The position numbers and the translations under genes are program-made. A DNA stretch of 64,000 bases, from IMG/VR virus record IMGVR_UViG_3300050821_013430, positions 62,001-126,000 of that record; one strand, 5' to 3'. Shown in pieces: positions 7,141 to 63,321 of the stretch (its first letter is position 1; the number at the start of each line of letters is the position of its first letter). A model generated the notes under the pieces. It saw only the letters and a list, made by a program, of their open reading frames with translations, did not search any database and was not told the origin of the DNA.

Positions 7141-7473
7141 TTATGGCTTCTGTTTGGCTAATTCTACTTCTTGCGCCAAATGTTGTAGGGCTTCTTCAAT
7201 CCTACCTAGCCAAGCGTCTAAATTGATAGGAGTAGGGCCCAAGGTTGGAATCTGGGGTGCCGGATCATTGTCTGCGTGGTGAGAAGCGCGAAAACCTACT
7301 TCCGGAGAGAGATCATCAGGTTTGAGAGCACTTTTCATATTATTGTACTCATAAAGATCATCCAAGGCCCAAACGGTAGATCGGGCCTTCCAATCATTTT
7401 GGGCGGAATCCCCGTGTAATTGGGCTAATTTGAGGAAGCGAGAGCAGAGAAATTGTAAGTGCAGCAAGTCCAT
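7141..7473 (-). CDS. Hypothetical protein, possible internal head protein
   Basis: N-terminus MDLLHLQFLCSRFLKLAQ resembles that of the neighbouring gene. Confidence 0.55.
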   Translation of the reverse strand: MDLLHLQFLCSRFLKLAQLHGDSAQNDWKARSTVWALDDLYEYNNMKSALKPDDLSPEVGFRASHHADNDPAPQIPTLGPTPINLDAWLGRIEEALQHLAQEVELAKQKP

Positions 7474-7480
7474 ATTATAA

Positions 7481-8014
7481 CTAACTATTTAGAGCCTGAG
7501 CGACTTCGATCATCCGAGGATCGCCGGGTTTCAATTTTCCGTCCAATTGAGCATCATATACCCAAGCATTAGTGGGCCGGTGGTACTTGATAGTCTTCCC
7601 AGTGGCCAATCGGATCCTCTCCAGTAGCTCCGGCGGAATATGTTGGCCTTTGAAGATCACACGAACATTGTCAATCACCGCCTCGCCAGTTTCCCGATTG
7701 ACCTTGGCATCGACCACCATCTTAGAATCATGCGGCCAAGAATAGATCATTCCCAGGCGAACAACTGGATTGACCGCATACTCGGGGTCAAACTCGAGAA
7801 CTTCTTTACGGTCGTAGTCATCGTCTTCGGGCTGTCCAAACTGAGCAAACCAAGCCTCCACCACCGGCCAGACCCTTTCGTTCTTGGCTCGTTGGTCAGC
7901 TTTTCGCTGTTCTTCCTTGCGACGATCCTGTTCCCGCCAATCCTCATCGTCATCCCAGATTCCTGCAAGTTTGACGAACCGATCACATAAGCGTTGTAGT
8001 CGATCTAAATTCAT
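7481..8014 (-). CDS. Hypothetical protein, possible internal head protein
   Basis: Start reassigned to MNLDRLQRLCDRFVKLAG (8014), 6 nt after the late-promoter motif. Confidence 0.6.
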   Translation of the reverse strand: MNLDRLQRLCDRFVKLAGIWDDDEDWREQDRRKEEQRKADQRAKNERVWPVVEAWFAQFGQPEDDDYDRKEVLEFDPEYAVNPVVRLGMIYSWPHDSKMVVDAKVNRETGEAVIDNVRVIFKGQHIPPELLERIRLATGKTIKYHRPTNAWVYDAQLDGKLKPGDPRMIEVAQALNS

Positions 8015-9014
8015 GAGAAGATGCGAAAATATTAGCCTTTTGAGCGACTTCGTATTTACGAGGGAGGTAGATGATGGCATCGTGGTAGAGGTAGTTGGTG
8101 ATTTTAGAAAGCACACCATTTCCGCCATATTCAAGGGCATAGTGTTTTTTAATCAGACGAGGCTTCTTTTTATCAATGCCAAGTTCTTCGGCGAAAATAG
8201 CGCTAACTACGGAGAGAAATTCATTGGTACCACACAAAGAAAAATATACCTGAGGAACGGTTCTACCATTTTTTGGTTTACTAATGTAAAAACTACCATC
8301 ACCATCATTATAGCCACGAATAAAATGATGTCGCAATGAATGATTTATGATCCATTCTGGGAAGGTATAGATGAGACTTTTAGCAGGTACAATATTGAAT
8401 TTGGCCAGTTCATTGACCATTATTTCCGAAGTAATAGTAAAACTGCTGGCTAAGGAATTATTCCATTTTGGGTTACGTTTATTAGACTTCACCTCATATT
8501 GTCTAACTTTCGCATCTGATTTTAATAATTCCTTTATAAGAAGAAGATGCTGCTCATCATATCTAGCCAAACTGAGTTGTATTTCATAACGGAAATTACC
8601 ACTGGACGAAAGTCGTTTTTTGACGCATCCATCTGCTGCTAAAAATCCAGCCACGTAAAAAATCGCCTCATTTTCATTGGAAAAGAAATGATCATCACAA
8701 ATGCGTTTTATCTGCGGATTGAAATATAATCCAAACTTTTGCATATATCGTTTTATAGTGCCACAATCTACACCAAGTTTTCGTCCCACGGCCTTTAGAC
8801 TGCCGTACTCAGCATATGCTTGTTCTAATACTTCTTGTGTCAATAAAATATCTCGACGTGGTTTTACAATACAATCGATACCGCATATCTCGAAGGCTGT
8901 ATAGACGGTTATTGGATTTATACCATATTTTTCGGCTATTTTAGTAGCTGATCCAATGATTTCTAATTCTTGTTTTAATTGTTCGGGCGTTAAAATTTTG
9001 AGCAGTTTGTTCAT
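7983..9014 (-). CDS. LAGLIDADG homing endonuclease
   Basis: FYVAGFLAADG and FIRGYNDGDG motifs, N-terminal HTH repeats. Confidence 0.85.
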   Translation of the reverse strand: MNKLLKILTPEQLKQELEIIGSATKIAEKYGINPITVYTAFEICGIDCIVKPRRDILLTQEVLEQAYAEYGSLKAVGRKLGVDCGTIKRYMQKFGLYFNPQIKRICDDHFFSNENEAIFYVAGFLAADGCVKKRLSSSGNFRYEIQLSLARYDEQHLLLIKELLKSDAKVRQYEVKSNKRNPKWNNSLASSFTITSEIMVNELAKFNIVPAKSLIYTFPEWIINHSLRHHFIRGYNDGDGSFYISKPKNGRTVPQVYFSLCGTNEFLSVVSAIFAEELGIDKKKPRLIKKHYALEYGGNGVLSKITNYLYHDAIIYLPRKYEVAQKANIFASSHEFRSTTTLM

Positions 9015-9090
9015 ATGAGTCCTTAGTGACAGCGCCCACTAAAATAATGAGCTATTCATATGTTATATTATGCGTAGCGCCCAAAGATAA

Positions 9091-13093: not shown

Positions 13094-13124
13094 ATATGTC
13101 TCCAAGTTTGACGTTTTATTATAT

Positions 13125-19440: not shown

Positions 19441-19441
19441 T

Positions 19442-20275: not shown

Positions 20276-20286
20276 GTTGTCTCCTT

Positions 20287-40889: not shown

Positions 40890-41603
40890 CTAACCCTCTT
40901 TCTTTTGGCTCGGCAACCTATCTCTAATTGTAATTGTTATAGTGCGTTCCACATCGGGCTGATCGGTAGTAGCTTTGACACTGAATAACTTGTCGATCAA
41001 ACTATCATATCCATTGACTGCAATATCGTGTCGAGTAATCACAGTTTCTTTGGTGGCATCCTTATGCAACAAGTCTTCGTCCTTGCTAAGAATAGCTTGT
41101 TTGATTTGTTGCTCTGACATCTGTCCTAATTTTTCTGGCGTCAATCGATATCGGACATGCAATAATTCTTCCAAATAGTCAAAACTGCCAACACCTGGTT
41201 GATTGTCGGTATAATCCGCATCCTTTTGCAAAGAACGCAATCCTTTGTCTATCGAAGATAGCAAAGTGCGAGCATAACTATCTTGCCATTCCGGTTCATT
41301 CTCATAAGTTTTCTTGATGGATTGAAGAACCTTTTGCAATCGGGAAAATTGATCCAATTTATGCTCAATGGCTTCGGAAATAAAGGAATCGGAACGATGG
41401 TAATTTTGCAAGCCCCGACGAGGGATGATTTGATGGCCCTGATCAATGCGACGGGTATCAAAAGCTACTTTGATTAGGCCGGGACTTTCCAAATTGGCAA
41501 AGGCAACTTTTCGCAATTCCAAACCCTCTCGACAGGCAGGGGTAGTGGAAGCGGATAAAAGCTGGTAGTATATTTGGTTGATTTGATCGCGATCCAAGGG
41601 CAT
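40890..41603 (-). CDS. Hypothetical protein
   Basis: Intact ORF with GGGAG SD and late-promoter motif. Confidence 0.6.
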   Translation of the reverse strand: MPLDRDQINQIYYQLLSASTTPACREGLELRKVAFANLESPGLIKVAFDTRRIDQGHQIIPRRGLQNYHRSDSFISEAIEHKLDQFSRLQKVLQSIKKTYENEPEWQDSYARTLLSSIDKGLRSLQKDADYTDNQPGVGSFDYLEELLHVRYRLTPEKLGQMSEQQIKQAILSKDEDLLHKDATKETVITRHDIAVNGYDSLIDKLFSVKATTDQPDVERTITITIRDRLPSQKKEG

Positions 41604-42381: not shown

Positions 42382-43401
42382 CTACGCCCCGATAATTACG
42401 CTCTTATTGCCTTTTGCAGCCCCTCTGGGATTGACAATTGCCAAACCAATCTGCTCACTTACGACCCAGCCTAGTTTGAGCTGGCGGGGTTCGTCTGCAG
42501 GGAGAACTTCGATGTCTTGACGGATCGGCATAACCCCTAGAAATTCGGGATCGGCGACGCAATACACGGTTCCGGGGGGCACAATCTTGCTCACCAGGAT
42601 GTCAGCGCCCCAGATGTGAGCATACAGCCCAGTCTGAAGGATTTCGCGCATCGTGACGGGATCAACTTCCCCACCACCTACGCCCTGACCACCACCGCTA
42701 CCCCACTTGAGGATATCGGTAAACTCGTTGATGTTCATGAAGAACTTCGTGGTTACGAGGTCCCAGCGATCAACTTGAGCCTTTAGCTCAACGAGGTCGC
42801 GCTTGAGAAGACCCGCATCTGCGATGTCTTGCACTGTGTTTTCAACCGAAGCCGCTGCGTCAATGGCCGCAAAGACGTTAGCGTCTTCTTGTGCCATGAT
42901 TTCTTGACGAGCCTTCTGAACTGCACGGTCGATAACATTGAACCGACGACGCTTAACTTCCGAAATACGAACTGTGGGGTTGGCCACGATTTCGAACTCG
43001 GGAACCACAACGCGGTCACCGAAGACACGTGATTCTGGTGCGGTGCCGTTGCTGGAAACTACGACAGCAGCGACATCGATATCACGCTCATATGTCGGAT
43101 ATGCACCCTGACTAAGTGGATCAACCACGAGAGCCCGGCGAGCGATTCCATGATAGTCCAAGTTTCTGCGAATTGGATTCGCCATTGCTTGGGCTAGAGC
43201 AATTTTGCCTTCTTGGCTGCTGATGGCTCTGGCCATCAAATCATCACGATTTTGGTCAGAGAGGCTTGGTTGTCCCGCAAGACCTTGATTCGCCGGAACA
43301 TTCTCCTGAAGAATTGCAGCATATTTCGCCAAACATTGGATGGCGTCTTGGAGCGAGGTGGCATTCATTTGCCCCTGTCCGTTAAACATTTGATTACTCA
43401 T
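42382..43401 (-). CDS. Major capsid protein (HK97-fold)
   Basis: LAQAMANPIRRNLDYHGIARRALVVDPL, FEIVANP, EIMAQED, LKLGWVVSEQIGLAIVNP. Strong SD, own promoter and terminator. Confidence 0.85.
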   Translation of the reverse strand: MSNQMFNGQGQMNATSLQDAIQCLAKYAAILQENVPANQGLAGQPSLSDQNRDDLMARAISSQEGKIALAQAMANPIRRNLDYHGIARRALVVDPLSQGAYPTYERDIDVAAVVVSSNGTAPESRVFGDRVVVPEFEIVANPTVRISEVKRRRFNVIDRAVQKARQEIMAQEDANVFAAIDAAASVENTVQDIADAGLLKRDLVELKAQVDRWDLVTTKFFMNINEFTDILKWGSGGGQGVGGGEVDPVTMREILQTGLYAHIWGADILVSKIVPPGTVYCVADPEFLGVMPIRQDIEVLPADEPRQLKLGWVVSEQIGLAIVNPRGAAKGNKSVIIGA

Positions 43402-46486: not shown

Positions 46487-47764
46487 TTATTTGGCGCCCT
46501 GGAAATTGGCCATTTCCTCTTGTAATCCTGCCATTTCCCCCTCAAAATCAGGCTCTTGCGGCATCTGATAAATGGTTGGATTAGTAGCAGCGGAAGGGGC
46601 GGTAGCAACCGAATGAATTTCCTGCATTACTGAATTGATGCCGCTAGACGCTGTTTTGGTGGTAGTTTCGAGGGCTTTCATCGCTCCAATGGCCTTATGC
46701 ACATTGTCGCCGAAAATGCCGGTAATCGGCGTCTTCAATTTCGCCCACCAATCCGATTCCTGGGAGGCATAACGGCCCTGTTCGGCTGCATTGATGAAAA
46801 CATCGGCCAGATGGTTCAATTGAGTAATTTCGTCCAAATAAGCGGTAGCAACCGACTCTGCCTGATGTTTAGCGGAAGGATCGTTGGTTTGCATATGCAT
46901 TTGATCGACCGTTTGAGCGTAAAGATTGGCGGTTTGTCCGATATGTTTGAGGGAAGTAGCCAAACTATGCAGCAAGGGGTCATTAGCGTGCTCTTGCATC
47001 AATGCAACGGTGGCGTCTAGGGCCTCTTGAGCATTGATAGCGACATTTTTGGCTTGGGGAGCGGTCTTGAAGATGGCAGAAAGCACCCCACCGGCTGCGC
47101 CAGCGATACGAGCCCCTAACCAAGCGCCTGGGAGGATGTCCTGAGGGCCTGTAAAGGCTCCGATGATACCGCCCGTCACCCCACCCAAAACTGCGGCAGT
47201 GCCCGCCCCAGAGCCCACATCTTCGACTTCTTCTAGCCCGCCTTGAAAGAGATTTGTGACATCATCCAAGCCAAAAGCCTTAGCATAGAGTTGTTCAATG
47301 CAAACATCGGCCAAAACCCTTAGCTCAGCCATAGATTGATTTTCCAGATGATTGGCGGTTCTAACCAGGGACTGCATTAGCTCGGATTGGGCGTACCGAT
47401 GATGAGTATAATTGCCATCGGGAGTCTTATGAACGATATGCAGCATAATATTCTGGCGTTCGTTGTTGTTTTCCACCAAAGCATTGAGACGATCGTAGGC
47501 GGGGGCGAGAACGCAGGCGTTAGGGTGAGCGTCCTCGATGATATTACGCTCGTACTTCATTGATTCGGGAAGATCGGGCTTGACGCCATAAAGAGCGGAG
47601 ATAGTATCCGCATCTTGCCAACTCCAACGAGGATTTTTCTCCAAGAGTTTCTTGGAATCATCAGGATTAGGCTCTTTTTTAGCGGCAGTAGCCACCAAAC
47701 CCTCTTTTTGGGCCAGTTTGAGAAAGTTCTCAAAGACCTCAGTGTCGATATTTTGTCGTGGCAT
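46487..47764 (-). CDS. Putative internal head/ejection protein with glycine-zipper hydrophobic helices
   Basis: FLKLAQ, AHP..ERQ module, AAVLGGVTGGIIGAF. Confidence 0.5.
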   Translation of the reverse strand: MPRQNIDTEVFENFLKLAQKEGLVATAAKKEPNPDDSKKLLEKNPRWSWQDADTISALYGVKPDLPESMKYERNIIEDAHPNACVLAPAYDRLNALVENNNERQNIMLHIVHKTPDGNYTHHRYAQSELMQSLVRTANHLENQSMAELRVLADVCIEQLYAKAFGLDDVTNLFQGGLEEVEDVGSGAGTAAVLGGVTGGIIGAFTGPQDILPGAWLGARIAGAAGGVLSAIFKTAPQAKNVAINAQEALDATVALMQEHANDPLLHSLATSLKHIGQTANLYAQTVDQMHMQTNDPSAKHQAESVATAYLDEITQLNHLADVFINAAEQGRYASQESDWWAKLKTPITGIFGDNVHKAIGAMKALETTTKTASSGINSVMQEIHSVATAPSAATNPTIYQMPQEPDFEGEMAGLQEEMANFQGAK

Positions 47765-47784: not shown

Positions 47785-48795
47785 CTATTTGTACTGGACA
47801 TTGGTGGTTGGAGGGCCTTTTGCTGGGGCTTTTTCGGCTAATTCATCCATAAAACTATCCACTATCTGTTTTCTAGAGGTAAATTCCTTAGGAATGAAGG
47901 TATAATTACCGGAATTGGTCTTATTATAGTCCTGAATGGCATCTACCGCCTTTTGGAAACCAGAAGTTGAGCGAATTTGAGAGTCTAAACCTTTGGTATC
48001 GGGATAAATCGCTTGTACCCAGTCAGCGATGGTGTTGCCAATTTCCTCAGGAGGAACCGTTTCGATCCAATAACCAGTAATATTGAGTTTTTCAGGATGA
48101 TAGTCGGGGGCGGGCTTGAAGGTAGTTTGAGTAGAAGAAACAGGAACATACTCAGAAGATGGGGAAGGGGCTAGAGGGTTGGCGGAAAGAGGAGAAGGTT
48201 TGCCCATTAGTTTAGCACCGGCATCACCTAAAACCATCAGACCGGCAGCAGAAAGAGCGGCCTTAAAAATCCAAGCGATAACTCGCCAGAGGATAGAGCC
48301 TGTCTTTCCACGAAGCAAATCGAAGAAAGAAGCACGAGAGATTTTGGTTTTAGGAGAGTGTAGCAAATCGATCCAAGTCAATTTCAATAACTGTACTTCT
48401 CGAAGAGAAACAGATGCGGCAACAGAACCACCTAAAACCGCACCCTTCGCGGCTTGATCTATATGTTCAGGAGTAATAGTACCGTCATGAAGGGGGCCGG
48501 TGATAGCGTCAATAATGGAAGAGAAAATGCCAGTCAAACTGAATCCAAAAATTTGCTCTGCCGCTTCCAATAAAATTGACATCCACTTGAATCCCATCGC
48601 ATACATAATGCCTGGCACTAATAGATTCAATACTGAGGCTACCTTATTTTTTGGATCAATATGAGCCGAAATATAGTCTGAAATCCAACTACCGATAGAA
48701 CTGGTTAGCCCAGAAGCAGTCTTGACTTTCGAATCTCTAACCAATTCTTCTACCAAAAGAGTATCTTGCAAAAACTGATGACGAGCGTTATTCAT
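47785..48795 (-). CDS. Putative ejection protein with hydrophobic helices
   Basis: KVKTAS, several TM-like segments. Confidence 0.45.
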   Translation of the reverse strand: MNNARHQFLQDTLLVEELVRDSKVKTASGLTSSIGSWISDYISAHIDPKNKVASVLNLLVPGIMYAMGFKWMSILLEAAEQIFGFSLTGIFSSIIDAITGPLHDGTITPEHIDQAAKGAVLGGSVAASVSLREVQLLKLTWIDLLHSPKTKISRASFFDLLRGKTGSILWRVIAWIFKAALSAAGLMVLGDAGAKLMGKPSPLSANPLAPSPSSEYVPVSSTQTTFKPAPDYHPEKLNITGYWIETVPPEEIGNTIADWVQAIYPDTKGLDSQIRSTSGFQKAVDAIQDYNKTNSGNYTFIPKEFTSRKQIVDSFMDELAEKAPAKGPPTTNVQYK

Positions 48796-49985
48796 TAGTG
48801 CGCCCCTCGATCTACTAGTCTCTTGATTTCTTGCAGCGATTCAATATTGCCTTGTAGGATGGAATATCCTTGCCCGATTTGCTTATTCAGATCTTCCTGC
48901 ATATCCTTTGCCATCCCCTGCATCGCAAGCGCAACATTATTCAGCATAGCGCTAATAGGATACATCACTTCTAACACTCCGCCAATAAATTTGGAAGCAG
49001 CATAATTAGAATTGGCAACATAACCGCCCATCGATCTCCGAACGGTAGCGGGAAGCCCGGCCGCGGTGGTATCAGGACTGGATAGCATAATTTGTTTCAC
49101 TTTGTAGGTATTGACCAATTGATTGATGGGAGCAAGCACCTGATTCTCAATTTCATTGGTATCAAGGGGAAGTTTGAGTTCCCGAACATAAGACATCCAA
49201 TTTTCTGCCCAACTGGCGATCCTGCCCAAATCAACCCAATTACGATTCAACGGAAATTGATTGAGTTGTTGTATTACTCCCTGCAATTTTGCTTCTTGTT
49301 GCTGTTGTTGGGCGCCTGATTGTTGATAAGAAACTGGAACGGCTTTGGATGAATCGAAGGGGGCACCGGGAGCACCAGGGGCGCCGGTGGGCACTTCGTC
49401 GGGTTTCTTTTCTAACCCCTTCATTTCTTGTTGATGTTGTTCTTCGGTAGTTGGATACTTGACTTCGGAAGCGCCAGGCGGGGGCACGACAAAATTCAGT
49501 TTGCTTTCAATTTCTTGACCGATAGCGGTAAGTCTGGCCTGTCCAAACTTATTGTCTTCCATCTTAGAACCAAGATCGTGAATGTAAGCGATTAGTCCTG
49601 CCGGATCAATGTAGTATTGGGGTTGGCCAGTTTTTGGATATGGGAGGTACTCCGCCTTTACTCGATCGGAAGGCAGCTCTTCCAATCCTTGTCCTGCCCC
49701 ACCCGGATAGACAATTCTGGCACCATTGAATTTGACTTCCTTAGTTTGGAGGAAACTCAATAGAGAGTCTAGACTAGCCAAATCCTTGATGAAAACTTCG
49801 GCATCGGGGCGGTCTGAATAAATGCTGGACTCTGGCAATGCATTGAGCAGTTTGCGAGCAATACCTTGCAACATTTGTTCCCCAGCGGCCAAATTAGGAC
49901 TCTGAGCAAGTCTAACTAACTTCTCTAATTCTTGATCGAATAGAGACTTTACCAGAACTTGTGTTTCTTCATCATTGAAAAGCAT
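48795..49985 (-). CDS. Putative internal virion protein
   Basis: VRLAQ motif, helical, operon context. Confidence 0.45.
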   Translation of the reverse strand: MLFNDEETQVLVKSLFDQELEKLVRLAQSPNLAAGEQMLQGIARKLLNALPESSIYSDRPDAEVFIKDLASLDSLLSFLQTKEVKFNGARIVYPGGAGQGLEELPSDRVKAEYLPYPKTGQPQYYIDPAGLIAYIHDLGSKMEDNKFGQARLTAIGQEIESKLNFVVPPPGASEVKYPTTEEQHQQEMKGLEKKPDEVPTGAPGAPGAPFDSSKAVPVSYQQSGAQQQQQEAKLQGVIQQLNQFPLNRNWVDLGRIASWAENWMSYVRELKLPLDTNEIENQVLAPINQLVNTYKVKQIMLSSPDTTAAGLPATVRRSMGGYVANSNYAASKFIGGVLEVMYPISAMLNNVALAMQGMAKDMQEDLNKQIGQGYSILQGNIESLQEIKRLVDRGAH

Positions 49986-51079: not shown

Positions 51080-52240
51080 TTACTTCCCTTGGCTCATTAC
51101 ATATTGATGAGCGTCATTGATGTTTTTTTTCAGGTCATCCAATTTCTTTGCGTCTCCAGCAGTTGGCGTGGTACGAATGCTTTGATCTAGATCGGAAAGT
51201 TCTTTATCCTCTCCTGCAGCCCAATCCGCAGTTGCTTTATCGGAACGCTTTGTTTTGATTTCATTGAGCTGACTGCGTAGAGTAGCAATATCACCAATCA
51301 TACTTTTTTGTGTCGGGCCAGCTTTTGGTATGTCTTTATAAATTGGAAGAGCGCCTTGTATCAATTGGGCTGCTTGTTGTAGAGCGCGCTTGGAAGTAGA
51401 AAGTACCGTACTAAGTTGGCCACCAATTTCGGGTTCCAATACAACAGTTTTTCTACCACCCTTTTGCAAACTAGGGCCAACAGCTACCGCTACCATATCT
51501 ATATAATCTTGAACAACCCGAACAATTTCTCCAATAAAAGTGGCTTGTGGTGAGCCATCAAATTTGGTGCGGAAACTGGATATTTCAGAATTGAAATTGT
51601 TAGCATCATCTGAGAATGTATTAACATAATGCTCTACAAATGGAACAGGCAGCGCTCGCCAGGCTCCGCGTTGAGGCAGTTGGGTAGAATTTACGGCCAT
51701 CGTAGTAGCGGCGTTGATATTATCTACGGCCGCATCGACCATTGCTTTTGCGTCATTTTCAGGTGTATCGGCAGTCTTGATTCTCATCAATGCCGCAGCA
51801 ATTTTGGCATCCAATTTACCCGTTGGTTCCTTCTCTACTACTTGTCTGATTTTCTTCTGGCGCTCTACGATGGTTTCAATTTCACCCAGTTCGTTCCAAC
51901 TCTTGTCCAGTTTTTTACCACCATCGGGATGAGCAAAATCGATAATGTCTTCGCCCTCTTCATCATGTACATGATAGAGATGCACTTCGGCTGTTTTCAT
52001 CAGCAAGAAATTTTGCTCAATCTCTTGGGCAGCAGATTCCAGGCCAGCCCCGCGAAGCCCTGAGCATAATTTGAGCAGGTTCTCCGAGAGAGATTCACCC
52101 GGCGCTAAATCAGCCTTTTTAAAGACAGAGGCTTGTTTGGTGAGAGGGGCGGGTTGAGAAACCCAGCCTTTTTGATATGCCAACCGATCGAAGGCGTCCA
52201 TCGTAATTAGAGTGTCGCGTTTGGGCAATTTGAAAGTCAT
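51080..52240 (-). CDS. Putative internal head protein
   Basis: KQAS, KKAD, KTAE, KTAD motifs and AHP..ERQ module. Confidence 0.5.
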   Translation of the reverse strand: MTFKLPKRDTLITMDAFDRLAYQKGWVSQPAPLTKQASVFKKADLAPGESLSENLLKLCSGLRGAGLESAAQEIEQNFLLMKTAEVHLYHVHDEEGEDIIDFAHPDGGKKLDKSWNELGEIETIVERQKKIRQVVEKEPTGKLDAKIAAALMRIKTADTPENDAKAMVDAAVDNINAATTMAVNSTQLPQRGAWRALPVPFVEHYVNTFSDDANNFNSEISSFRTKFDGSPQATFIGEIVRVVQDYIDMVAVAVGPSLQKGGRKTVVLEPEIGGQLSTVLSTSKRALQQAAQLIQGALPIYKDIPKAGPTQKSMIGDIATLRSQLNEIKTKRSDKATADWAAGEDKELSDLDQSIRTTPTAGDAKKLDDLKKNINDAHQYVMSQGK

Positions 52241-53992: not shown

Positions 53993-54730
53993 TTATTTCT
54001 TGCTGGATTTGGATTTACTATCGGCTTTGCTCTTGGATTTGCTGTCAGACTTGGACTTGCTATCCGCTTTACCCTTGCCAAAAGGCATCTTTTTGCTGTC
54101 TTTCTTAGAGTCCTTTTTGGAATCCTTTTTTGAGTCTTTCTTCTTTTTCTTGGAATCCATTTTCTTTTTCTTGGCTTCTACTACGAAGCTGGCGATTTTA
54201 AGACTTAGCGAAGCGCTCTTCTCTAGTCCGATTTGGTCGAGTACGGCCGAAGCGGTTAGCAAGTGAGCTGCAGCCTTATCGAGGGCATCAGCTAATTGTG
54301 CGTCGCTTGCGTCCTGTTCATCGGCTTCCTGATCATCGGCACTAGACGAATCAGATGACTCATCTTTTGCTTCTTGATCATCGGCACTGGCTGAATCTTC
54401 TGACGATTCGTCCTTTGCATTGCCTTTATCATACGCGGGTGCGGCGGGATAGAGGCCTTTACCATCTGAAGCGCTCATCGAGGAAGATGATTCCTCTGTT
54501 GAGTGATCTTTGGCATTGCCCTTATCGAAGGACGGTGCTGCGGGATACAATCCCTTATCACCGTCTCGTACGTTTCCATCATCTGCTTTGGCAGAGCTGG
54601 ACTCGCTGCTTTTATCTTTGGCAGGAGCCGCATCTTCTGTGGCATACCGACTAAACAAGGATTTATTAGCGTCCAAGTTTTTCTTCATATCTGCAGCAAT
54701 AGTGTCTGCTAAACTAATCTTTGTCATCAT
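53993..54730 (-). CDS. Putative internal head protein with acidic middle and Lys-rich tail
   Basis: Two KGLYPAAPxxDKGNAKD copies, SADDQ repeats, KKDSKK tail. Confidence 0.6.
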   Translation of the reverse strand: MMTKISLADTIAADMKKNLDANKSLFSRYATEDAAPAKDKSSESSSAKADDGNVRDGDKGLYPAAPSFDKGNAKDHSTEESSSSMSASDGKGLYPAAPAYDKGNAKDESSEDSASADDQEAKDESSDSSSADDQEADEQDASDAQLADALDKAAAHLLTASAVLDQIGLEKSASLSLKIASFVVEAKKKKMDSKKKKKDSKKDSKKDSKKDSKKMPFGKGKADSKSKSDSKSKSKADSKSKSSKK

Positions 54731-54742: not shown

Positions 54743-57700
54743 TTAGAAGAGTCTTTTGTTGGAGGTTGAAAACGCGGCTGTAAGTTGTGAAACTAAGTCG
54801 CCTTCTTGTTCGCTCACTACATCAGCCTGACTAACCAAACCTACTTGCGGTAGGCGTCCGGCTGATTTTTGAAGTAGAGGGGCATGACGTGCGATAACCC
54901 TTTGCATACCTTCGAAGGATTCATCATTCCACTTCATAATCGATTCCACTTCACTAGCGATGGCTGTCTTTTCGTTGGGAATCAATCCACGATTTGCCAT
55001 ATCATAGGCAACCTCATAAGAACGAGCCAACTTGACACGATACTTGTTCATTTCTTCGTCAGCCTGAGCTTTAGCATGCTCCTTAACTAATTCAGTAGCA
55101 AACTCTTTACCAGAAGGCCCTACTTCACCATAGAACTCTTTCCAGTATTTGACTGCAGCGGGATCGACACCATTAGCAACCAGAGCGTCCAGATCTTTGG
55201 AGCTGAGTTTACCTTCTGATACGAGTTGCTGAATCATTTCCGCCTCTTTACGAACCTTGGGAGGCATGGTAGCTACTTCTAGCATTCTATCATGTTTCTC
55301 TTCTAGATTCTCTACGACTTCCAAACCATCTTGAGGCTTGACATCGAGAGGTCCGGGCTCAGCACCACCCTTAGGATGGAAATCATAGAACACGGGGTTC
55401 CATTTGATATCTGCTGCTAGCTTGGTGCGAAGTGTTTCGCGAGCTGCACGAGATTCTAGTTCAGCTGAAACTACTTGACTACCGGCCGGAACCATTACTG
55501 TCTTTCCGTCTGGCGTAGTAACCTTGACCGCATCAGCATCATTCATGTCGCTGGCGCAGCTAACTGAACTTTCCTCACTTGACATAGCATCCGAAGCATC
55601 ATTGACTTCCTGATCAGCATCATCCGCATCAGCGTCATCTGCTAGATCATCTGCCAACATTGCATCGACCGCTTCATTTGCTGCAGTTGCTGTTTGGGTT
55701 GCGGCATCATCAGCAGCCAAACCGGCCTCGATTTCCGCAATTTCTTTGCCTGTATCACCAATCATAGCCATTAGTCCTAAATCCATATGATCTCCGTTGC
55801 CTTGTCGTAGCATTTCTGCTTCTTCTTCGGCACGCTTTACCATTGCTTGGGTACCGTGCGCGTATTTGACGAAAGAATCCATTACCTTGAAAAGGTTAGC
55901 CAGAGACACGTTAGCGTCTGTAATGGCATCATTTACCAACGAATTGACCAAATCTTTGGTCTTTTCATTGACAACACCTTTATCGTACATTCCTACGATA
56001 GTGCTGAGCTCCTGTTCGTGATCTTGTAGAGAAGCGATGCACTCCTTGAACGCTAGAATCAGCGCGCCATTTAGCTCTTTCCGCATACTATGAAGAGCGG
56101 CGGTGCTAACACGACTTGAATCTGATGCATCGTCTGCGGGAGACATTGCCGCACCTGGAGCTGAAGCCTCAGGAAGAGCGGGAGCGCCCATATCACCAAG
56201 ATCGCCCATCTCGGCTTTTTCGCCTAATAGTTCTTTGACCACTTCTGTGGCATCCGAAATACCATCGCGCGCCTTGTCGAGAGCTTCCATGGCCTTATCT
56301 TTGACGTTGCCATCTTTACCTGCATCCATTCCTGCGTCAGGAGCGCTGGATGCTTCTCCGGCGCCGCTATCCATTGGAGGCATAGCATTAGGGGTGCCAG
56401 CTGGGGGAGGCGGAGGAGCAGCGGCTTGACCACTCTTGATAAGTGATGATGTCTTTGCTGCACCGAAAGCCTTTACCTTGGCAAGTAAATCCTCACCGTA
56501 GGTCTTGGTACCGATTACATTGTGAAGCGCATCTGCACGCCCAGCAGAAATTTCATCTACCGAAGCAGTAAGAACTAACTCACCGTCTTGGAAAACTCTC
56601 CAAACACTCTTGCCTGGATTCTGAGCATTCTTGGTAAAACGAGCAGTAAGACCGGGCTTTACTTCTGCTCTTTGTAGTAATTTCTTGCGGGCAAGCTCAT
56701 CACTGGGCTCCGCTGAATCGGGAGAGGGGTGTAGTCCTTCGACATCTCCAATATCTGGGAAAGGCTTTTGACCTACCATTTGCTTGTCTTCTTTATTGCG
56801 AAGGTGTTCATTGAGAGGATCAATCTCATAGCGTCGCTTGCCGGGTGTTGGTTCATTTAGCCCACCACCACCCAGGAAGTAGCCTTCTTTCTTGGTCTCT
56901 TCTAGAGCGTCTTTGACCTTTTGGATGACTGCTGTCCGACGCATAGCCCTTTCTTCGGCTTCGGCGCGGGCTAACATCTTTTTTAGCTCCATATCGGATT
57001 TTCCTTCATGATGTGAATTGGGGTATAGCCCTTCAACATCACCAACTCCTGGGAAAGGCTTTTGGCCTACCATTTGTTTGTCTTCCTTGTCGCGAAGATG
57101 CTCATTGAGAGGATCTACCTCATACCGACGTTCACCTGGAGTGGGCTCATTGAGTCCGCCCCCACCTTGAAAGTAGCTTTGTTTCTGCATATCTTTTGAT
57201 CCCGACATAGTATCCTCTTTGTTGATAGTGGCTAATTTATCCAAATCTTTTTGCATTTCAACTAACCGTCTCTCAATAGATGCCTTGACTTGCATAAGTT
57301 CTTGTTTCAATTCGTTATTGGTTTCAGCGGCTAAAAACCTTTGAGACGGAGGCGCCAGGGTTTGGTCAGTGCCTGGAAATTCAGATTCAGGCATTGCCAA
57401 AGTCCCTGAGGACTGATTATATGCCGCTTCATTAGTATCTTTTTGCATTGAGGTGTTGATTTCCTCTAATTTTTCGAAGGCAGAATTGATATCTTGCCTA
57501 AATTGACCAAGATCATTAGCCTGAATATCAAAAGAGGTAGCATTACCGCTCCCGTCATCACGAGCAAGTCTAGCGGTAAATTGATTATCTGCCAACCTCT
57601 TCAATTGTTCTTGTTTAGTTTCTACATAAGCATTGAGAGTATTGGCTGCTGCAATGATGTGCTTGATATGAGCTTTTGGATCAGCACCATTGACTACGAT

Positions 57701-58393
57701 TGATAGTTCAATTGGATTGAGATCGATATTGATTTCACCATAGCATGATTTATTTCTCATGTGAGTGCAAAAGTCAGATTCGACCCGAGCTACATTACCA
57801 CAATCCGAACAAATGGCCCGACCTACCGCAGTTCCCATACTTACCGCAGTTTGATACCCAGTGGCTACTTTGCGAGCTAAATCTGGATAGTTGAATTTGT
57901 CGAGAGCGCACAATCCGATAACGCGCTTCAAATTACGATCATAATAAGTGTCTACGATAAAGCCACGAACATGATCTACAGAGCTAGATTTATGATCTAT
58001 ACAGAGGGGCTTACCAATCCACTTCTTATATGCTTTGACTAACTCTTCTTCTGGAAAGATATCACCATTAGCATTTTTATATGGCTTGATAGCCTTATCA
58101 CTACATACCCATTTCCAACTTCCATTACTCTTATCCCAAGAGGCAGTAATCGTTTTACCGAAACGATCTAGTTTTTGGGTTCCATCTTCATTGATAGTCG
58201 AGGCCTCGGCAGCGTGAAGCATGGCCGCTGAAAAATATAGAAAATCATTTGCTTTGGGGGCAATTTTCTTCAAATTCTCCGCAAATTTACTAAATTCTTC
58301 TAATTTTTGAGGATCAAGAACTGGAATTACGGTTTCAATACCCTGAACATTTTCTGGACCAATTTCCAGCGATTCTCCAAATTTAGCAAACAT
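54743..58393 (-). CDS. Prohead maturation protease fused to scaffold region
   Basis: NGDIF..GKPLCIDH..VRGFIVD..VSMGT..CSDC..FCTH..ELSIVVNGAD (HK97-type protease), long helical/acidic C-region. Confidence 0.8.
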   Translation of the reverse strand: MFAKFGESLEIGPENVQGIETVIPVLDPQKLEEFSKFAENLKKIAPKANDFLYFSAAMLHAAEASTINEDGTQKLDRFGKTITASWDKSNGSWKWVCSDKAIKPYKNANGDIFPEEELVKAYKKWIGKPLCIDHKSSSVDHVRGFIVDTYYDRNLKRVIGLCALDKFNYPDLARKVATGYQTAVSMGTAVGRAICSDCGNVARVESDFCTHMRNKSCYGEINIDLNPIELSIVVNGADPKAHIKHIIAAANTLNAYVETKQEQLKRLADNQFTARLARDDGSGNATSFDIQANDLGQFRQDINSAFEKLEEINTSMQKDTNEAAYNQSSGTLAMPESEFPGTDQTLAPPSQRFLAAETNNELKQELMQVKASIERRLVEMQKDLDKLATINKEDTMSGSKDMQKQSYFQGGGGLNEPTPGERRYEVDPLNEHLRDKEDKQMVGQKPFPGVGDVEGLYPNSHHEGKSDMELKKMLARAEAEERAMRRTAVIQKVKDALEETKKEGYFLGGGGLNEPTPGKRRYEIDPLNEHLRNKEDKQMVGQKPFPDIGDVEGLHPSPDSAEPSDELARKKLLQRAEVKPGLTARFTKNAQNPGKSVWRVFQDGELVLTASVDEISAGRADALHNVIGTKTYGEDLLAKVKAFGAAKTSSLIKSGQAAAPPPPPAGTPNAMPPMDSGAGEASSAPDAGMDAGKDGNVKDKAMEALDKARDGISDATEVVKELLGEKAEMGDLGDMGAPALPEASAPGAAMSPADDASDSSRVSTAALHSMRKELNGALILAFKECIASLQDHEQELSTIVGMYDKGVVNEKTKDLVNSLVNDAITDANVSLANLFKVMDSFVKYAHGTQAMVKRAEEEAEMLRQGNGDHMDLGLMAMIGDTGKEIAEIEAGLAADDAATQTATAANEAVDAMLADDLADDADADDADQEVNDASDAMSSEESSVSCASDMNDADAVKVTTPDGKTVMVPAGSQVVSAELESRAARETLRTKLAADIKWNPVFYDFHPKGGAEPGPLDVKPQDGLEVVENLEEKHDRMLEVATMPPKVRKEAEMIQQLVSEGKLSSKDLDALVANGVDPAAVKYWKEFYGEVGPSGKEFATELVKEHAKAQADEEMNKYRVKLARSYEVAYDMANRGLIPNEKTAIASEVESIMKWNDESFEGMQRVIARHAPLLQKSAGRLPQVGLVSQADVVSEQEGDLVSQLTAAFSTSNKRLF
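56727..57175 (-). repeat. Two copies of a roughly 50-aa repeat within the protease/scaffold
   Basis: YFxGGGGLNEPTPGxRRYExDPLNEHLRxKEDKQMVGQKPFP occurs twice. Confidence 0.9.
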
Positions 58394-60721: not shown

Positions 60722-60723
60722 TT

Positions 60724-61128: not shown

Positions 61129-61132
61129 AGTA

Positions 61133-61531
61133 TTACTTGCCCTTGAATAAGTCTTTTACAATTTTACTGTCTCGACTATTTATGAACGTATCTTTGAGAA
61201 CACCAGTCTCATCCACTTCTGTTAGGAATCTGATGGCTCTTTCATTTAGACAAATGATATTACCAAACTGTATCTTTTTAGTTTTCTGATCTATATAGGC
61301 GCAATTTAGAACTAAACACTCCTTGAAAGCCGTAATAACTTTGCCAACCAACACTGCCGGATAACAAACCGTACTATCGTCATATTTGATATCCTCGTAT
61401 CGATCACCTACATAAATCTCCACTATTCGCCCTTTCAATACCTTAGCTACTACCTCGGCAAGTGAAATTGTACGATCTTTATTTTCTTGCAAATCTTGAA
61501 CGGCAAGTTCAAATTCTTTTTCAGTCGCCAT
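61133..61531 (-). CDS. Hypothetical protein
   Basis: Start likely at MATEKEF. Confidence 0.55.
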   Translation of the reverse strand: MATEKEFELAVQDLQENKDRTISLAEVVAKVLKGRIVEIYVGDRYEDIKYDDSTVCYPAVLVGKVITAFKECLVLNCAYIDQKTKKIQFGNIICLNERAIRFLTEVDETGVLKDTFINSRDSKIVKDLFKGK

Positions 61532-62237
61532 AGTTAGATGTCTTTTTCTTAGCATATTTCTTGATCGATAATTGTTTTTGAGAGGCTAGAGAGGATAATA
61601 ATTGATCTAAAAACTTCTCTAATTTAGATAAAAAGTCTTCATTGCCGGGCGATATCGTTGTTGGTTGGGATTTAGTGGCAGCATAAAACTCTGATAATTT
61701 TTGTTTATAGTTTGCATAAGTTTTAACTTTATTGAGAAATTTTTCTAGATCTCCTAAGGTAATTTTCCCATCTTGATCCAGATCTAAGCCTCGATTAGCG
61801 TAGTAAGCTTTTATTTCGAAATCAATAGAAACAGTACGATGTGGATTAGGTTCTGGATGACTAGAAATGATAATGGCATTAGGATTGTTAGCCTTCACAT
61901 CCGGATACGAAAGGGCGAGGGGCCATAAATTAGCCACATACATTTGAGCTGCCGATTTGAAAGGGCCACCATTGAGGCTAAGTTGAGTACGAAAATATCG
62001 TTCAATATATGGTAATTGTTCTTCACCTGACAATTGTCGAAAATCGTCAGGAGAACCACGAAAGCCTACTCCGCGTAAAGAACTGGGTAAAAATTGCGTC
62101 AAACCAACCGCCTTAGATGGTACTTGTGGATTAAGGCCAGACTCCAACTGCATAATAGCCAGTACATCCTCTGGTTTTAGGCCTAAAGAATTGCTCATTT
62201 GAGCTAATTTAATGTAGAAGTTGGGGCCTAGGGCCAT
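61521..62237 (-). CDS. Lytic transglycosylase (SLT/lysozyme-like), likely virion-associated
   Basis: IMQLESG..AVGLTQF..EQL, plus an EF-hand-like LDLDQDGKIT. Confidence 0.75.
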   Translation of the reverse strand: MALGPNFYIKLAQMSNSLGLKPEDVLAIMQLESGLNPQVPSKAVGLTQFLPSSLRGVGFRGSPDDFRQLSGEEQLPYIERYFRTQLSLNGGPFKSAAQMYVANLWPLALSYPDVKANNPNAIIISSHPEPNPHRTVSIDFEIKAYYANRGLDLDQDGKITLGDLEKFLNKVKTYANYKQKLSEFYAATKSQPTTISPGNEDFLSKLEKFLDQLLSSLASQKQLSIKKYAKKKTSNYGD

Positions 62238-62238
62238 T

Positions 62239-63321
62239 TTATCCTTTTAATATAACTTTGGCTATCAATTGGGCTATAATCGGCTTTGATGTTTCAGTTT
62301 TAGCCGATGGATTAAATGGTGGCTTAAAAGGAGGTTTAACTTCCTTAGATGATTCTGGTTTAGCTGGTGGATTATTTTGAATGTATTCCTTGAGAGACTC
62401 TATTTTAGCAGATTCTTCCGGAGAAACTGGAGCAGGAATTGGTTTTGAAATAGGTAATCCTGGATACGGTTTGGTAGGAGTAGAAGATGGTTTACCAGAA
62501 GAAGGGGACGACGGTCCTCCGACAGTCGAAGCGGGGGCGCCTGGAAGTACCCCTCCTACACCGAGAGCTTTGGACTTAGCCTCTTCTGCTGCTTTTTGAG
62601 ATTCAATATAACTTTTAACATATTTGTTGTAAAAATCATTGAAAGACTTATTATAGGCACGATATTTATTGTTGATGCCTGGCAACAGTCGAACATAATC
62701 TTCAATTTTACGACCTACCCGATATTTACCTAATTGTTTAAGTAAATTAAGGAAGGTCGATGATAATGCCTTGCTCTTGTTAAGCATATTGTTAGTTTGA
62801 TTTTTTAATTCTCTAGCTGTTTGTGGAAAACGCTTTTCCCATTGTCGCAGCCCTTTGCCACGATCAGTGGTCATTGAATACCACCAATCAGATAGCCCAG
62901 CCTCTTTAACACTAGCAGTTTTAGTAGGAGCGCCTTTGAACCATTTAGGCATCTTTTCCATCAGATACTCTTTTTGATTCGGATCTAAATCTCCAAATAA
63001 AAAAGCATGATGATGTTTATGTACTACATCATTGAGGCCTTGGAAGGCTGTCATAATTTCTTCCATCTTCTCGTGAAATTTAGCCAAATAAGAAATAGCA
63101 AACATATACTCGCGACGATTGAAATTAGATTCCGCTATTTTGAGATAATCTTTAAGCTCAAAAGCCTTTTCACGAACTTCGTCATCAACACTAATCAGTT
63201 TGTCGATAATTTCTCGATACTCATCAGACCCTAAAAAATCGGTCTTTAGATCTTTCAATTTCCCAAAAGTTTTTTCTTTGGTACGTTGAAGCCAATTGAG
63301 TCGTTGTGCAATCTTATCCAT
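62239..63321 (-). CDS. Putative internal head protein
   Basis: MDKIAQ, KTASVKEAG motifs, Pro-rich tail. Confidence 0.5.
   Translation of the reverse strand: MDKIAQRLNWLQRTKEKTFGKLKDLKTDFLGSDEYREIIDKLISVDDEVREKAFELKDYLKIAESNFNRREYMFAISYLAKFHEKMEEIMTAFQGLNDVVHKHHHAFLFGDLDPNQKEYLMEKMPKWFKGAPTKTASVKEAGLSDWWYSMTTDRGKGLRQWEKRFPQTARELKNQTNNMLNKSKALSSTFLNLLKQLGKYRVGRKIEDYVRLLPGINNKYRAYNKSFNDFYNKYVKSYIESQKAAEEAKSKALGVGGVLPGAPASTVGGPSSPSSGKPSSTPTKPYPGLPISKPIPAPVSPEESAKIESLKEYIQNNPPAKPESSKEVKPPFKPPFNPSAKTETSKPIIAQLIAKVILKG

What the first reader, a model, noticed from the sequence alone, without database searches (positions are those of the whole stretch)
7141..63321. Shared K/R-x-A motif in putative head proteins: candidate capsid-targeting/cleavage signal
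Unrelated proteins carry near-N-terminal LCSRFLKLAQ (7473), LCDRFVKLAG (8014), ENFLKLAQ (47764), LVRLAQ (49985), FYIKLAQ (62237), MDKIAQ (63321), LYKLAR (61128) and VKTAS (48795). Internal KQAS, KTAD, KEAG and KMAQ also occur. By analogy with the T4 capsid-targeting sequence and the T4/phiKZ x-x-E cleavage sites, this may direct packaging and processing by the 1216-aa protease, with a different specificity.
Basis: inference. Interest (0 to 1): 0.65.

Follow-up and report, generated by a model that had tools for sequence, protein, structure and literature searches.

The report
Lys-x-Ala signal in megaphage head proteins
In this 473-kb phage and its relatives, including the cultured phage G, head-assembly proteins carry a conserved Lys-x-Ala tripeptide that is most likely where the phage's capsid-maturation protease cuts, a specificity not reported for any phage in the papers I could search.

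Summary
The quoted strings are all present, and the window is the head-assembly region of a 472.7-kb phage-G-like megaphage.

The strict tripeptide K-x-A is a real, head-specific signal. Pooled over the head modules of six genomes it is 597 observed against 418 expected (p about 1e-16). Every other K-A spacing, the reverse A-x-K, E-x-A, R-x-A, K-x-S and K-x-G are at or below chance, and K-x-A outside head modules is 1.02. It is the most often conserved of 400 a-x-b tripeptides in the window's head gene families. Phage G replicates the enrichment in proteins with no detectable similarity to the window's.

The 1216-aa protein is a T4-gp21/herpesvirus-assemblin-fold protease fused to a scaffold-like tail. 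Invariant K-x-A sites flank the protease domain, and one sits in a disordered linker 38 residues from the C-terminus, like the herpesvirus M-site.

Cleavage itself is not shown. Arg does not substitute for Lys. Four cited examples (7473, 8014, 62237, 61128) are unsupported, and the capsid-targeting idea has only weak support.

Verdict: interpretation partly supported; a new variant of a known kind.

The parts
54743..58393 (-). 1216-aa protease-scaffold polyprotein. Layout: N-peptide 1-38, protease domain about 46-253, a duplicated ~50-residue segment (407-456 and 505-555), Pro/Ala-rich and acidic linkers, and a helical C-terminal region.
   Evidence: PHROG head maturation protease E 6.6e-15; 14 orthologues at 34-55% identity; sequence map.
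57635..58258 (-). Protease domain (residues 46-253) with invariant H134 and S185, a terminal E-L-S-I-V-x-x-G-A-D motif and a Cys-rich insertion (C195, C198, C209).
58280..58288 (-). K36-F-A38, candidate N-terminal self-processing site just upstream of the protease domain.
   Evidence: K-x-A in 11/14 orthologues. Phage G gp19 has K-T-A at the aligned place.
54860..54868 (-). K1176-S-A1178, candidate tail-release site 38 residues from the C-terminus (analogous to the herpesvirus M-site).
   Evidence: K and A invariant in 10/10 sequences with variable, indel-bearing flanks, then a conserved P-x-V-G. Lies in a predicted disordered coil between helices.
55415..55423 (-). K991-L-A993, candidate internal site.
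   Evidence: Invariant in 10/10. Sits at the end of a short helix before a disordered stretch.
55829..55867 (-). K843-Y-A845 and K853-R-A855, a pair of conserved K-x-A sites.
   Evidence: Conserved 8/13 and 8/12.
55025..55033 (-). K1121-L-A1123, conserved but probably structural and not cleaved.
   Evidence: Conserved 8/11, but in the middle of a long helix with pLDDT 82-89.
42382..43401 (-). Major capsid protein (339 aa) with an N-terminal extension of about 45 residues that phage G gp27 lacks.
   Evidence: phrog_2522 E 2.8e-80; 53.5% identity to phage G gp27 from residue 47; PDB 6wkk E 3e-95.
43318..43326 (-). K26-Y-A28 in the capsid protein's N-terminal extension, candidate propeptide cleavage site.
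   Evidence: K-[YFH]-A-[AS] in 6/6 metagenomic orthologues; phage G's protein starts 44 residues later.
47711..47719 (-). K16-L-A18 of the 425-aa head-module protein (46487-47764).
   Evidence: K-[IL]-A in 5/8 orthologues, within a conserved F-[DN]-N-[FY]-x-K-I-A-x-x-K-G-L N-terminus.
48715..48723 (-). K25-T-A27 of the 336-aa protein (47785-48795).
   Evidence: In a local alignment the window and all six aligned orthologues have K-x-A-[QGSD] here. The automatic global alignment misplaces it.
49905..49913 (-). R25-L-A27-Q of the 396-aa protein (48795-49985).
   Evidence: [KR]-[LI]-A-Q in 3/3 sequences; the two orthologues have K-I-A and R-I-A.
52130..52138 (-). K35-Q-A37-S of the 386-aa protein (51080-52240), a linker-type site.
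   Evidence: K-x-A in 8/11 orthologues with variable flanks and large indels just after it.
51989..51997 (-). K82-T-A84 of the same protein.
   Evidence: Conserved 9/10.
54191..54220 (-). Tandem K171-S-A-S and K178-I-A-S in the 245-aa protein (53993-54730).
   Evidence: Conserved 3/4 and 4/4.
63307..63315 (-). K3-I-A5-Q at the extreme N-terminus of the 360-aa protein next to the portal gene (62239-63321).
   Evidence: M-[DE]-K-x-A-Q in 4/4 orthologues.
62899..62907 (-).
   Evidence: K-x-A-[GS] in 4/4, with flank identity 0.43 against site identity 1.00.
63133..63141 (-). K61-I-A63 of the same protein.
   Evidence: Conserved 3/4.
41463..41471 (-). K45-V-A47 of the 237-aa protein (40890-41603), which has 5 K-x-A against 0.9 expected.
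   Evidence: Conserved 4/4 in the near-complete relatives; count.
62202..62210 (-). K10-L-A12-Q of the SLT transglycosylase (61521-62237): not part of the signal.
   Evidence: Orthologues read KLTK, KFLQ, KLVQ; conserved 0/4. Lies just N-terminal of, and abutting, the SLT domain match, which starts at residue 17.
7423..7431 (-). K15-L-A17-Q of ORF 7141-7473: an unverified look-alike.
   Evidence: Paralogue of the 8014 ORF with no orthologues. Not above the reversed-sequence null with a profile built from head sites only.
7964..7972 (-). K-L-A-G of ORF 7481-8014/8140: an unverified look-alike.
   Evidence: Same as for the 7473 ORF.

Best explanation
K-x-A is the recognition tripeptide of the prohead (capsid-maturation) protease of phage-G-like megaphages: Lys at P3, any residue at P2, Ala at P1, and cleavage after the Ala.

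The enzyme is the N-terminal domain of the 1216-aa protein. It is a serine protease of the T4 gp21 / herpesvirus assemblin fold, fused to a long scaffold-like region.

Proposed action inside the procapsid:
- It trims itself at K36-F-A38 and at several internal sites.
- It releases a 38-residue C-terminal tail at K1176-S-A1178.
- It removes the capsid protein's N-terminal peptide at K26-Y-A28.
- It removes short N-terminal peptides (5 to about 37 residues) from several internal or minor head proteins.

The residue after the Ala is preferentially Q or S in this clade and S, A or G in phage G.

Shown here: the fold and catalytic-residue alignment of the protease, and the enrichment, conservation, spacing-specificity and head-specificity of K-x-A. 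Inferred: that the tripeptide is cut, the position of the scissile bond, and which sites are actually used.
For: 1. Specificity of the signal. Pooled over six head modules, K-x-A is 597 against 418 expected (1.43, p 1e-16). K-A, K-xx-A, K-xxx-A and K-xxxx-A are 0.92-0.99. A-x-K is 1.03, E-x-A 1.01, R-x-A 1.06, K-x-S 0.96 and K-x-G 0.79. K-x-A outside head modules is 1.02.

2. Per genome, K-x-A ranks 1st to 3rd of about 320-345 testable tripeptides in G002, G003 and G004, and 1st of 284 in phage G (64 against 38.4, p 9.6e-5; rest of that genome 1.06). The phage G carriers gp4, gp5, gp7, gp11 and gp21 have no BLAST similarity to window proteins, so this is an independent replicate.

3. Conservation. 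K-x-A is rank 1 of 400 tripeptides in the window's head families (15/51 against a 10% background). With whole-genome relatives it is 13/54 in head families against 13/167 elsewhere, Fisher p 0.0027. K-hydrophobic-A is 8/18 against E-hydrophobic-A 1/11 and R-hydrophobic-A 0/8.

4. P1-prime preference is head-specific: Q odds ratio 2.1 (p 1e-5) and S 1.8; S/A/G odds ratio 3.3 (p 3e-5) in phage G.

6. Site anatomy. Invariant K1176/A1178 sit in a disordered, indel-bearing linker 38 residues from the C-terminus. The PrV M-site removes 37 residues. Sites flank the protease domain in both the window protein and phage G gp19. The capsid protein's K26-x-A28 is conserved 6/6 inside an extension that phage G lacks.
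Against: - No mature N-terminus has been observed for any of these proteins. The one paper likely to hold phage G virion mass-spectrometry detail (Gonzalez et al. 2020) could not be read.
- In the window's own genome the raw enrichment is modest (1.25, p 0.023, rank 16 of 330).
- Some conserved sites lie in confident helices (K1121), so not every conserved K-x-A can be a cleavage site.
- Phage G's capsid protein has no K-x-A at all.
- The six genomes share ancestry, so the pooled p-value overstates independence. Phage G is the only truly independent replicate.
- Phage G also encodes ClpP and ClpX, which are reported in virions (PMC12484599).
- The structure-based docking test could not be run.
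Confidence: 0.66

Rival explanations
1. K-x-A is a docking or assembly motif that is bound but not cut. For example, it could be a short element by which internal proteins, the scaffold and the capsid protein's N-terminus attach to one another or to the protease. That would make it a targeting signal without proteolysis.
For: Several N-terminal sites sit in conserved amphipathic-helix-like contexts with conserved residues on both sides (F-[DN]-N-[FY]-x-K-I-A-x-x-K-G-L in the 47764 family; similar strings at the 52240 N-terminus and polyprotein K991). K1121 lies in a stable helix. The aromatic-x-K-hydrophobic-A form is enriched in the G000 head region (6 against 1.4) and leans towards N-termini.
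Against: Linker-type sites (52240 K35, polyprotein K1176, 63321 K139) are three-residue islands in otherwise variable, indel-bearing sequence. That fits a protease subsite better than a binding helix. The exact i+2 spacing and the P1-prime bias to small or polar residues match the P3-x-P1 logic of this protease fold. The extended helix form is absent from phage G while K-x-A is present.
Confidence: 0.17
2. The signal is a by-product of composition or secondary structure. Head and scaffold proteins are Lys/Ala-rich helical or coiled-coil proteins, and K-hydrophobic-A is simply a g-a-b heptad pattern.
For: A profile of the protease N-terminus weakly matches designed coiled coils through repeated K-K-I-A strings. 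Many carriers are predicted helical.
Against: Expectations were corrected for each protein's own composition. K and A at spacings 0, 2, 3, 4 and 5, and the reverse order, are at 0.92-1.04, whereas a helical-face or local-composition effect would raise i+3 and i+4. E-hydrophobic-A and R-hydrophobic-A are neither conserved nor enriched. About half of the conserved sites have a polar middle residue.
Confidence: 0.05
3. K-x-A is read by a different enzyme, for example the phage-encoded ClpP/ClpX, a host protease, or a lysine-modifying enzyme acting on head proteins.
For: These phages encode two ClpP paralogues (G000 172.5-173.8 kb). ClpP and ClpX were reported in phage G virion proteomics (PMC12484599).
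Against: ClpP is not known to be sequence-specific (my own knowledge). K-x-A sites bracket the gp21-like protease domain itself in both the window protein and phage G gp19, which suggests self-processing. The gene sits between portal and capsid genes, like other prohead proteases.
Confidence: 0.06

Closest known systems
Herpesvirus assemblin (UL26 / UL80 protease-scaffold polyprotein; R-site and M-site, consensus V/L/I-x-A then S)
   Different: P3 is Lys, not an aliphatic or aromatic residue; [VLI]-x-A shows no enrichment here. No conserved site at the end of the window's protease domain equivalent to the R-site, although phage G gp19 has K-V-A-S there. A Cys-rich insertion lies in the catalytic domain. 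It is a phage protein, not a eukaryotic-virus one. Binding of the tail to the capsid protein was not tested.
T4 gp21 prohead protease with L/I-x-E sites and the capsid targeting sequence of internal proteins
   Different: P1 is Ala, not Glu, and P3 is Lys, not Leu or Ile. L-x-E and I-x-E are not head-enriched here. The enzyme is fused to a scaffold region of about 950 residues, whereas T4 has separate gp22 and gp21. A targeting role for the N-terminal peptides is only weakly supported.
phiKZ gp175 / SPN3US gp245 prohead proteases (S/A/G-x-E)
   Same: A jumbo-phage prohead protease that processes many head proteins, mostly by removing N-terminal propeptides, plus self-cleavage (PMC10052503; PMC13282480).
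   Different: A different motif: [SAG]-x-E is at 0.85-1.04 in these head modules. The capsid protein lineage also differs (phrog_2522, HK97-like).
Bacillus phage G gp19 (annotated head maturation protease)
   Same: Orthologue of the window's protease domain (33% identity). It shares the Cys-rich insertion and the K-x-A pair upstream of the domain. Its head module shows the same K-x-A excess.
   Different: It is a stand-alone 300-aa protein, not a 1216-aa fusion. Its P1-prime preference is S/A/G, not Q/S. Phage G's capsid protein lacks the N-terminal extension and has no K-x-A. No cleavage motif for gp19 was found in the papers I could read.

Membership tests
gp21 / assemblin-fold prohead serine proteases (T4 gp21-like, herpesvirus protease-like) | The characteristic protease fold. 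| tested here: met
gp21 / assemblin-fold prohead serine proteases (T4 gp21-like, herpesvirus protease-like) | Catalytic Ser and His conserved at the positions of the family's active site. | tested here: met
   H134 and S185 are invariant in 14 sequences. They align with T4 gp21 H85 and S140 by hhalign (E 0.023, low probability with a single-sequence template). The identity of the gp21 catalytic residues is from my own knowledge. The third triad member was not identified.
gp21 / assemblin-fold prohead serine proteases (T4 gp21-like, herpesvirus protease-like) | Encoded in the head-assembly module between the portal and major capsid genes. | tested here: met
   Portal at 63362 onward (intact in G000), protease at 54743-58393, capsid protein at 42382-43401. 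The order is the same in phage G: gp14, gp19, gp27.
gp21 / assemblin-fold prohead serine proteases (T4 gp21-like, herpesvirus protease-like) | Proteolytic activity on head proteins. | not testable with these tools
   Needs enzyme assays or virion N-terminomics.
Sequence-family membership (Pfam prohead protease families; PDB sequences) | Significant sequence match to a curated protease family. | tested here: not met
   No Pfam hit at E 0.01 for the 1216-aa protein. No PDB sequence or profile hit. Only PHROG families match: phrog_18299 at E 6.6e-15 and phrog_2774. It is therefore a divergent lineage of the fold class, not a member of a curated Pfam family.
Protease cleavage motif (as opposed to a chance string) | Over-representation specific in residues, order and spacing, confined to substrate proteins. 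| tested here: met
Protease cleavage motif (as opposed to a chance string) | Conservation of the motif in orthologues above that of its flanks. | tested here: met
   Rank 1 of 400. Head against rest, Fisher p 0.0027. Site identity against flank identity: 0.79 vs 0.40 at 52240 K35, 0.77 vs 0.42 at K1176, 1.00 vs 0.43 at 63321 K139.
Protease cleavage motif (as opposed to a chance string) | Mature protein termini that begin right after the motif. | not testable with these tools
   No peptide-level data were available. The supplements of PMC12484599 are not held and Gonzalez 2020 is not held.
T4-type capsid targeting sequence | A short N-terminal peptide shared by unrelated packaged proteins. | tested here: inconclusive
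   [FYW]-x-K-hydrophobic-A falls in the first 40 residues in 44/121 cases, p 8e-6, but only 28/101, p 0.024, after collapsing homologues. It is absent from phage G. Profile searches do not exceed the reversed-sequence null.
T4-type capsid targeting sequence | Sufficiency of the peptide to direct a reporter into capsids. | not testable with these tools
   Needs a fusion experiment in a cultured phage.

The most novel reading that the evidence does not exclude
Phage-G-like megaphages use a previously undescribed specificity class of the gp21/assemblin protease superfamily, Lys-x-Ala followed by Q, S, A or G. This combines the herpesvirus P1 alanine with a basic P3. The protease-scaffold polyprotein is released from the shell at an M-site-like position 38 residues from its C-terminus. 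Short N-terminal peptides ending in [F/Y]-x-K-hydrophobic-A would also serve as capsid-targeting tags for packaged proteins, so the motif would predict the packaged proteome of uncultured megaphages from sequence alone.
Probability: 0.3. Interest if true: 0.7.

Novelty: new variant of a known kind. Interest (0 to 1): 0.58.

Why it matters
Proteolytic maturation maps exist for T4, phiKZ-like phages and herpesviruses, but not for the largest phages known.

- **Predictive use.** A sequence rule for the phage-G-clade protease would allow prediction of which proteins of uncultured 400-500-kb phages are processed head components, and where their mature ends lie.
- **Evolutionary link.** A P1-alanine specificity and an M-site-like tail release in a bacteriophage would tighten the link between phage and herpesvirus capsid assembly, beyond the shared protease fold.
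- **Testability.** The prediction can be tested now in phage G, which is cultured and already has virion mass-spectrometry data sets that could be re-searched.

Tried and rejected
[KR]-x-A-[QGSR] is at chance genome-wide (239 against 262).
- **Arg at P3.** Not supported: R-x-A is 1.06 in head modules, and R-hydrophobic-A is conserved 0/8.
- **Coiled-coil heptad or composition artefact.** Rejected by the spacing and charge controls.
- **SLT protein (62237).** Its KLAQ is not conserved.
- **ORFs 7473 and 8014.** They are paralogues with no orthologues, and they do not score above the null with a head-only profile.
- **Genome-wide N-terminal targeting helix (L-x-x-L-A-x-x-F-x-K-L-A).**
  - Profile hits do not exceed the reversed-sequence null.
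  - The positional bias weakens to p 0.024 after collapsing homologues.
  - The ClpP and DnaJ hits are coincidences of known domain signatures.
- **Sequence searches for the protease.** Pfam and PDB sequence or profile searches gave nothing. Megablast of the head region against cultured phages gave nothing.
- **PDB 6wkk (phage G gp27).** It carries essentially the full-length sequence, so it gives no information on processing.
- **Literature.** No K-x-A maturation motif was found. Gonzalez et al. 2020 and the supplements of PMC12484599 could not be read.

Full report
**What the window is.** The window is G000:C1:62001-126000 of a 472,749-bp IMG/VR virus record. Nearly all genes are on the minus strand. 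PHROG scans identify:
- a portal gene at the right edge (63362 onward; intact in the full genome at 125362-127242);
- an SLT transglycosylase (61521-62237);
- a 1216-aa protein whose residues 101-215 match a head maturation protease family at E 6.6e-15 (54743-58393);
- the major capsid protein (42382-43401, phrog_2522, E 2.8e-80);
- a virion structural protein (38573-40228).

Several homing-endonuclease-like genes are interspersed. There is no nucleotide-level match to cultured phages. By protein, the closest cultured relative is Bacillus phage G (497.5 kb): capsid protein 53.5% identical from residue 47 onward and protease gp19 33% identical.

**The observation.** The pattern as written, [KR]-x-A followed by Q, G, S or R, is at chance across the genome (239 against 262). 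Plain K-x-A is also at chance genome-wide (592 against 583.5). The picture changes with orthologues and with proper delimitation of the head module.

**Conservation.** A scan of IMG/VR with the 1216-aa protein returned 14 diverged loci at 34-55% identity. I aligned the head-module families and asked, for all 400 a-x-b tripeptides, how often both defined residues are kept in at least 60% of orthologues. K-x-A came first: 15 of 51 sites against a 10% background, ahead of G-x-G and P-x-G.

I then fetched four near-complete relatives (394-459 kb) and built 140 reciprocal-best-hit families. K-x-A was conserved at 13/54 sites in 19 head-region families (rank 2 of 400). It was conserved at only 13/167 in 121 other families (rank 132). 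Fisher p is 0.0027.

The effect is specific to Lys and Ala:
- K-hydrophobic-A 8/18 and K-polar-A 7/33 in head families;
- E-hydrophobic-A 1/11, R-hydrophobic-A 0/8, K-hydrophobic-S 0/5.

Site by site:
- *Conserved:* 47764, 48795, 49985 and 63321 N-terminal sites, and the internal KQAS (52240) and KEAG (63321).
- *Not conserved:* the SLT protein's KLAQ.
- *Weakly conserved:* 61128, KMAQ and KTAD.

**Enrichment and its specificity.** With the head module delimited in each genome through orthologues, composition-corrected K-x-A counts are as follows.

| Genome | Observed / expected | Rank |
|---|---|---|
| G000 | 88 / 70.2 | 16 of 330 |
| G001 | 112 / 89.0 | 23 of 339 |
| G002 | 101 / 68.3 | 1 of 321 |
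| G003 | 112 / 71.2 | 3 of 345 |
| G004 | 120 / 80.8 | 1 of 333 |
| Phage G | 64 / 38.4 (p 9.6e-5) | 1 of 284 |

The rest of every genome is at 0.98-1.06.

Phage G is the important replicate. Apart from portal, protease and capsid protein, its head-module proteins have no BLAST similarity to the window's.

Pooled, K-x-A is 597 against 418 (p about 1e-16). K-A, K-xx-A, K-xxx-A, K-xxxx-A and K-xxxxx-A are 0.92-1.04. A-x-K is 1.03, E-x-A 1.01, R-x-A 1.06, K-x-S 0.96 and K-x-G 0.79. A composition or helical-periodicity artefact would raise other spacings, and it does not.

In the pooled ranking only G-x-T and G-x-Q, from collagen-like repeats, exceed K-x-A. T4-type L/I-x-E, phiKZ-type S/A/G-x-E and herpes-type V/L/I-x-A show no head-specific excess. 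The excess is about 18-41 sites per head module.

The residue after the Ala is biased in head modules only. Q has odds ratio 2.1 and S 1.8 in the five metagenomic genomes. S/A/G has odds ratio 3.3 in phage G.

**The enzyme.** An AlphaFold model of residues 1-330, built with 14 sequences, has a confident core (pLDDT 78-89).
- Foldseek's best hits are T4 gp21 and then a run of herpesvirus proteases, though with weak E-values.
- H134 and S185 are invariant. In a profile alignment they fall on gp21 H85 and S140.
- No Pfam or PDB sequence match exists, so this is a divergent lineage of the fold class.
- A Cys-rich insertion (C195, C198, C209) is shared with phage G gp19.

Characterised members of this fold class read a P3-x-P1 tripeptide. 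Pseudorabies assemblin cuts YLQA/T and VQA/S (PMC4498786) and phiKZ cuts S/A/G-X-E (PMC13282480). T4's L/I-x-E is from my own knowledge. K-x-A fits this logic, with the herpesvirus-like P1 alanine.

**Site anatomy.** In the polyprotein, K36-F-A38 lies just before the protease domain. Phage G gp19 has K-T-A at the aligned place, and K-V-A-S immediately after its protease domain.

In a focused alignment of the last 257 residues, K991/A993 and K1176/A1178 are invariant in ten sequences. The K1176 site is flanked by indels and followed by a conserved P-x-V-G.

The fold of this region (pLDDT 59) places the sites as follows:
- K1176-A1178 is in a disordered coil between helices, followed by a short terminal helix.
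- K991 is at the end of a helix, before a disordered stretch.
- K1121 is inside a long confident helix, so it is probably structural and not cleaved.

Cleavage at A1178 would free a 38-residue tail. The PrV M-site frees the 37 residues that tether scaffold to capsid protein.

The capsid protein has K26-[YFH]-A28-[AS] in all six metagenomic orthologues, inside an N-terminal extension that phage G's protein lacks. Other linker-type sites (52240 K35, 63321 K139, 54730 K171/K178) are islands of identity in variable sequence. Further head-region proteins just outside the window carry several conserved K-x-A-[Q/S] sites (G000 132003-133730 and 134518-135237).

**The targeting idea.** Many helix-type sites have an aromatic residue two positions before the Lys.
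- [FYW]-x-K-hydrophobic-A is 6 against 1.4 expected in the G000 head region.
- Across five genomes it falls in the first 40 residues in 44/121 cases, p 8e-6, with flat controls.

This does not survive scrutiny well:
- The ClpP and DnaJ hits are known domain signatures.
- After collapsing homologues the bias is 28/101, p 0.024.
- Profile searches do not beat a reversed-sequence null.
- Phage G shows no such motif.
- The 7473 and 8014 ORFs are paralogues of each other, lack orthologues and lie outside the head module.

I treat capsid targeting as possible but weakly supported.

**Conclusion.** The best explanation is that K-x-A is the cleavage tripeptide of the phage-G-clade prohead protease (confidence about 0.66). 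The main rival is a bound-but-uncut docking motif (0.17). An artefact of composition (0.05) and a different enzyme (0.06) are unlikely.

No paper I could search reports this motif. The one most likely to bear on it, Gonzalez et al. 2020 on phage G, was not readable, so prior description cannot be excluded.

The finding is a new variant of a known kind. It can be tested directly by N-terminomics of phage G virions.

Noticed in passing
G001:C1:254950-257143 and G003:C1:36617-38741 (relatives; orthologues of window 42382-43401): The major capsid gene is split in two relatives at different positions: after about residue 77 in G001 and about residue 100 in G003, with roughly 1.1-1.2 kb between the pieces. 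This suggests independent intron or homing-endonuclease insertions. The window's own copy is intact.
   Followed up: partly
window 5313-6548, 7983-9014, 58383-59066, 41636-42310, 43556-44716: There are many homing-endonuclease-like genes in and around the head module. Two are phrog_4645 endonucleases. One HNH / endonuclease VII-like gene overlaps the start of the protease gene by 11 bases. Two ORFs flanking the capsid gene (one on the plus strand) have similar G-Q-K-F-x-x-L N-termini and Cys-rich motifs.
   Followed up: partly
window 57750-57812 (polyprotein residues about 195-215): A Cys-rich insertion (C-x2-C ... C-x-H) lies between the catalytic Ser and the terminal strand of the protease domain. 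It is conserved in 14 relatives and in phage G gp19 and looks like a zinc-binding ribbon. I did not check whether it is absent from T4 gp21 or the herpesvirus proteases.
   Followed up: partly
window 56729-57175 (polyprotein residues about 407-555): An internal duplication of a ~50-residue segment (G-G-G-G-L-N-E-P-T-P-G-x-R-R-Y-E-x-D-P-L-N-E-H-L-R ...), with the two copies ~98 residues apart, lies in the scaffold-like part of the polyprotein.
   Followed up: no
window 30195-37244 and 28416-29372: A 2349-aa protein and a 318-aa protein carry long collagen-like G-x-y repeats (G-P-T-G, G-P-Q-G). They account for the G-x-T and G-x-Q excess in the pooled tripeptide ranking.
   Followed up: no
window 12233-26283: A block of sugar-nucleotide and glycosyltransferase-like genes sits inside the structural region, judged only from N-terminal Rossmann motifs such as V-L-V-T-G-S-A-G-F-I. 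It might glycosylate virion proteins or fibres. No family scan was run on these genes.
   Followed up: no
G000:C1:172521-173762 (outside the window): Two adjacent ClpP-like genes are present, as in phage G, where ClpP and ClpX were reported in virion proteomics (PMC12484599). Their N-terminal Y-I-K-L-A-E-D-R-I-I-F-L strings match the aromatic motif only by coincidence with the ClpP signature.
   Followed up: partly
window 40890-41603: This 237-aa protein next to the capsid gene has the strongest K-x-A excess of any protein in the genome (5 against 0.9 expected, p 0.002). One site (K45-V-A) is conserved in all four relatives. It has no family match.
   Followed up: partly
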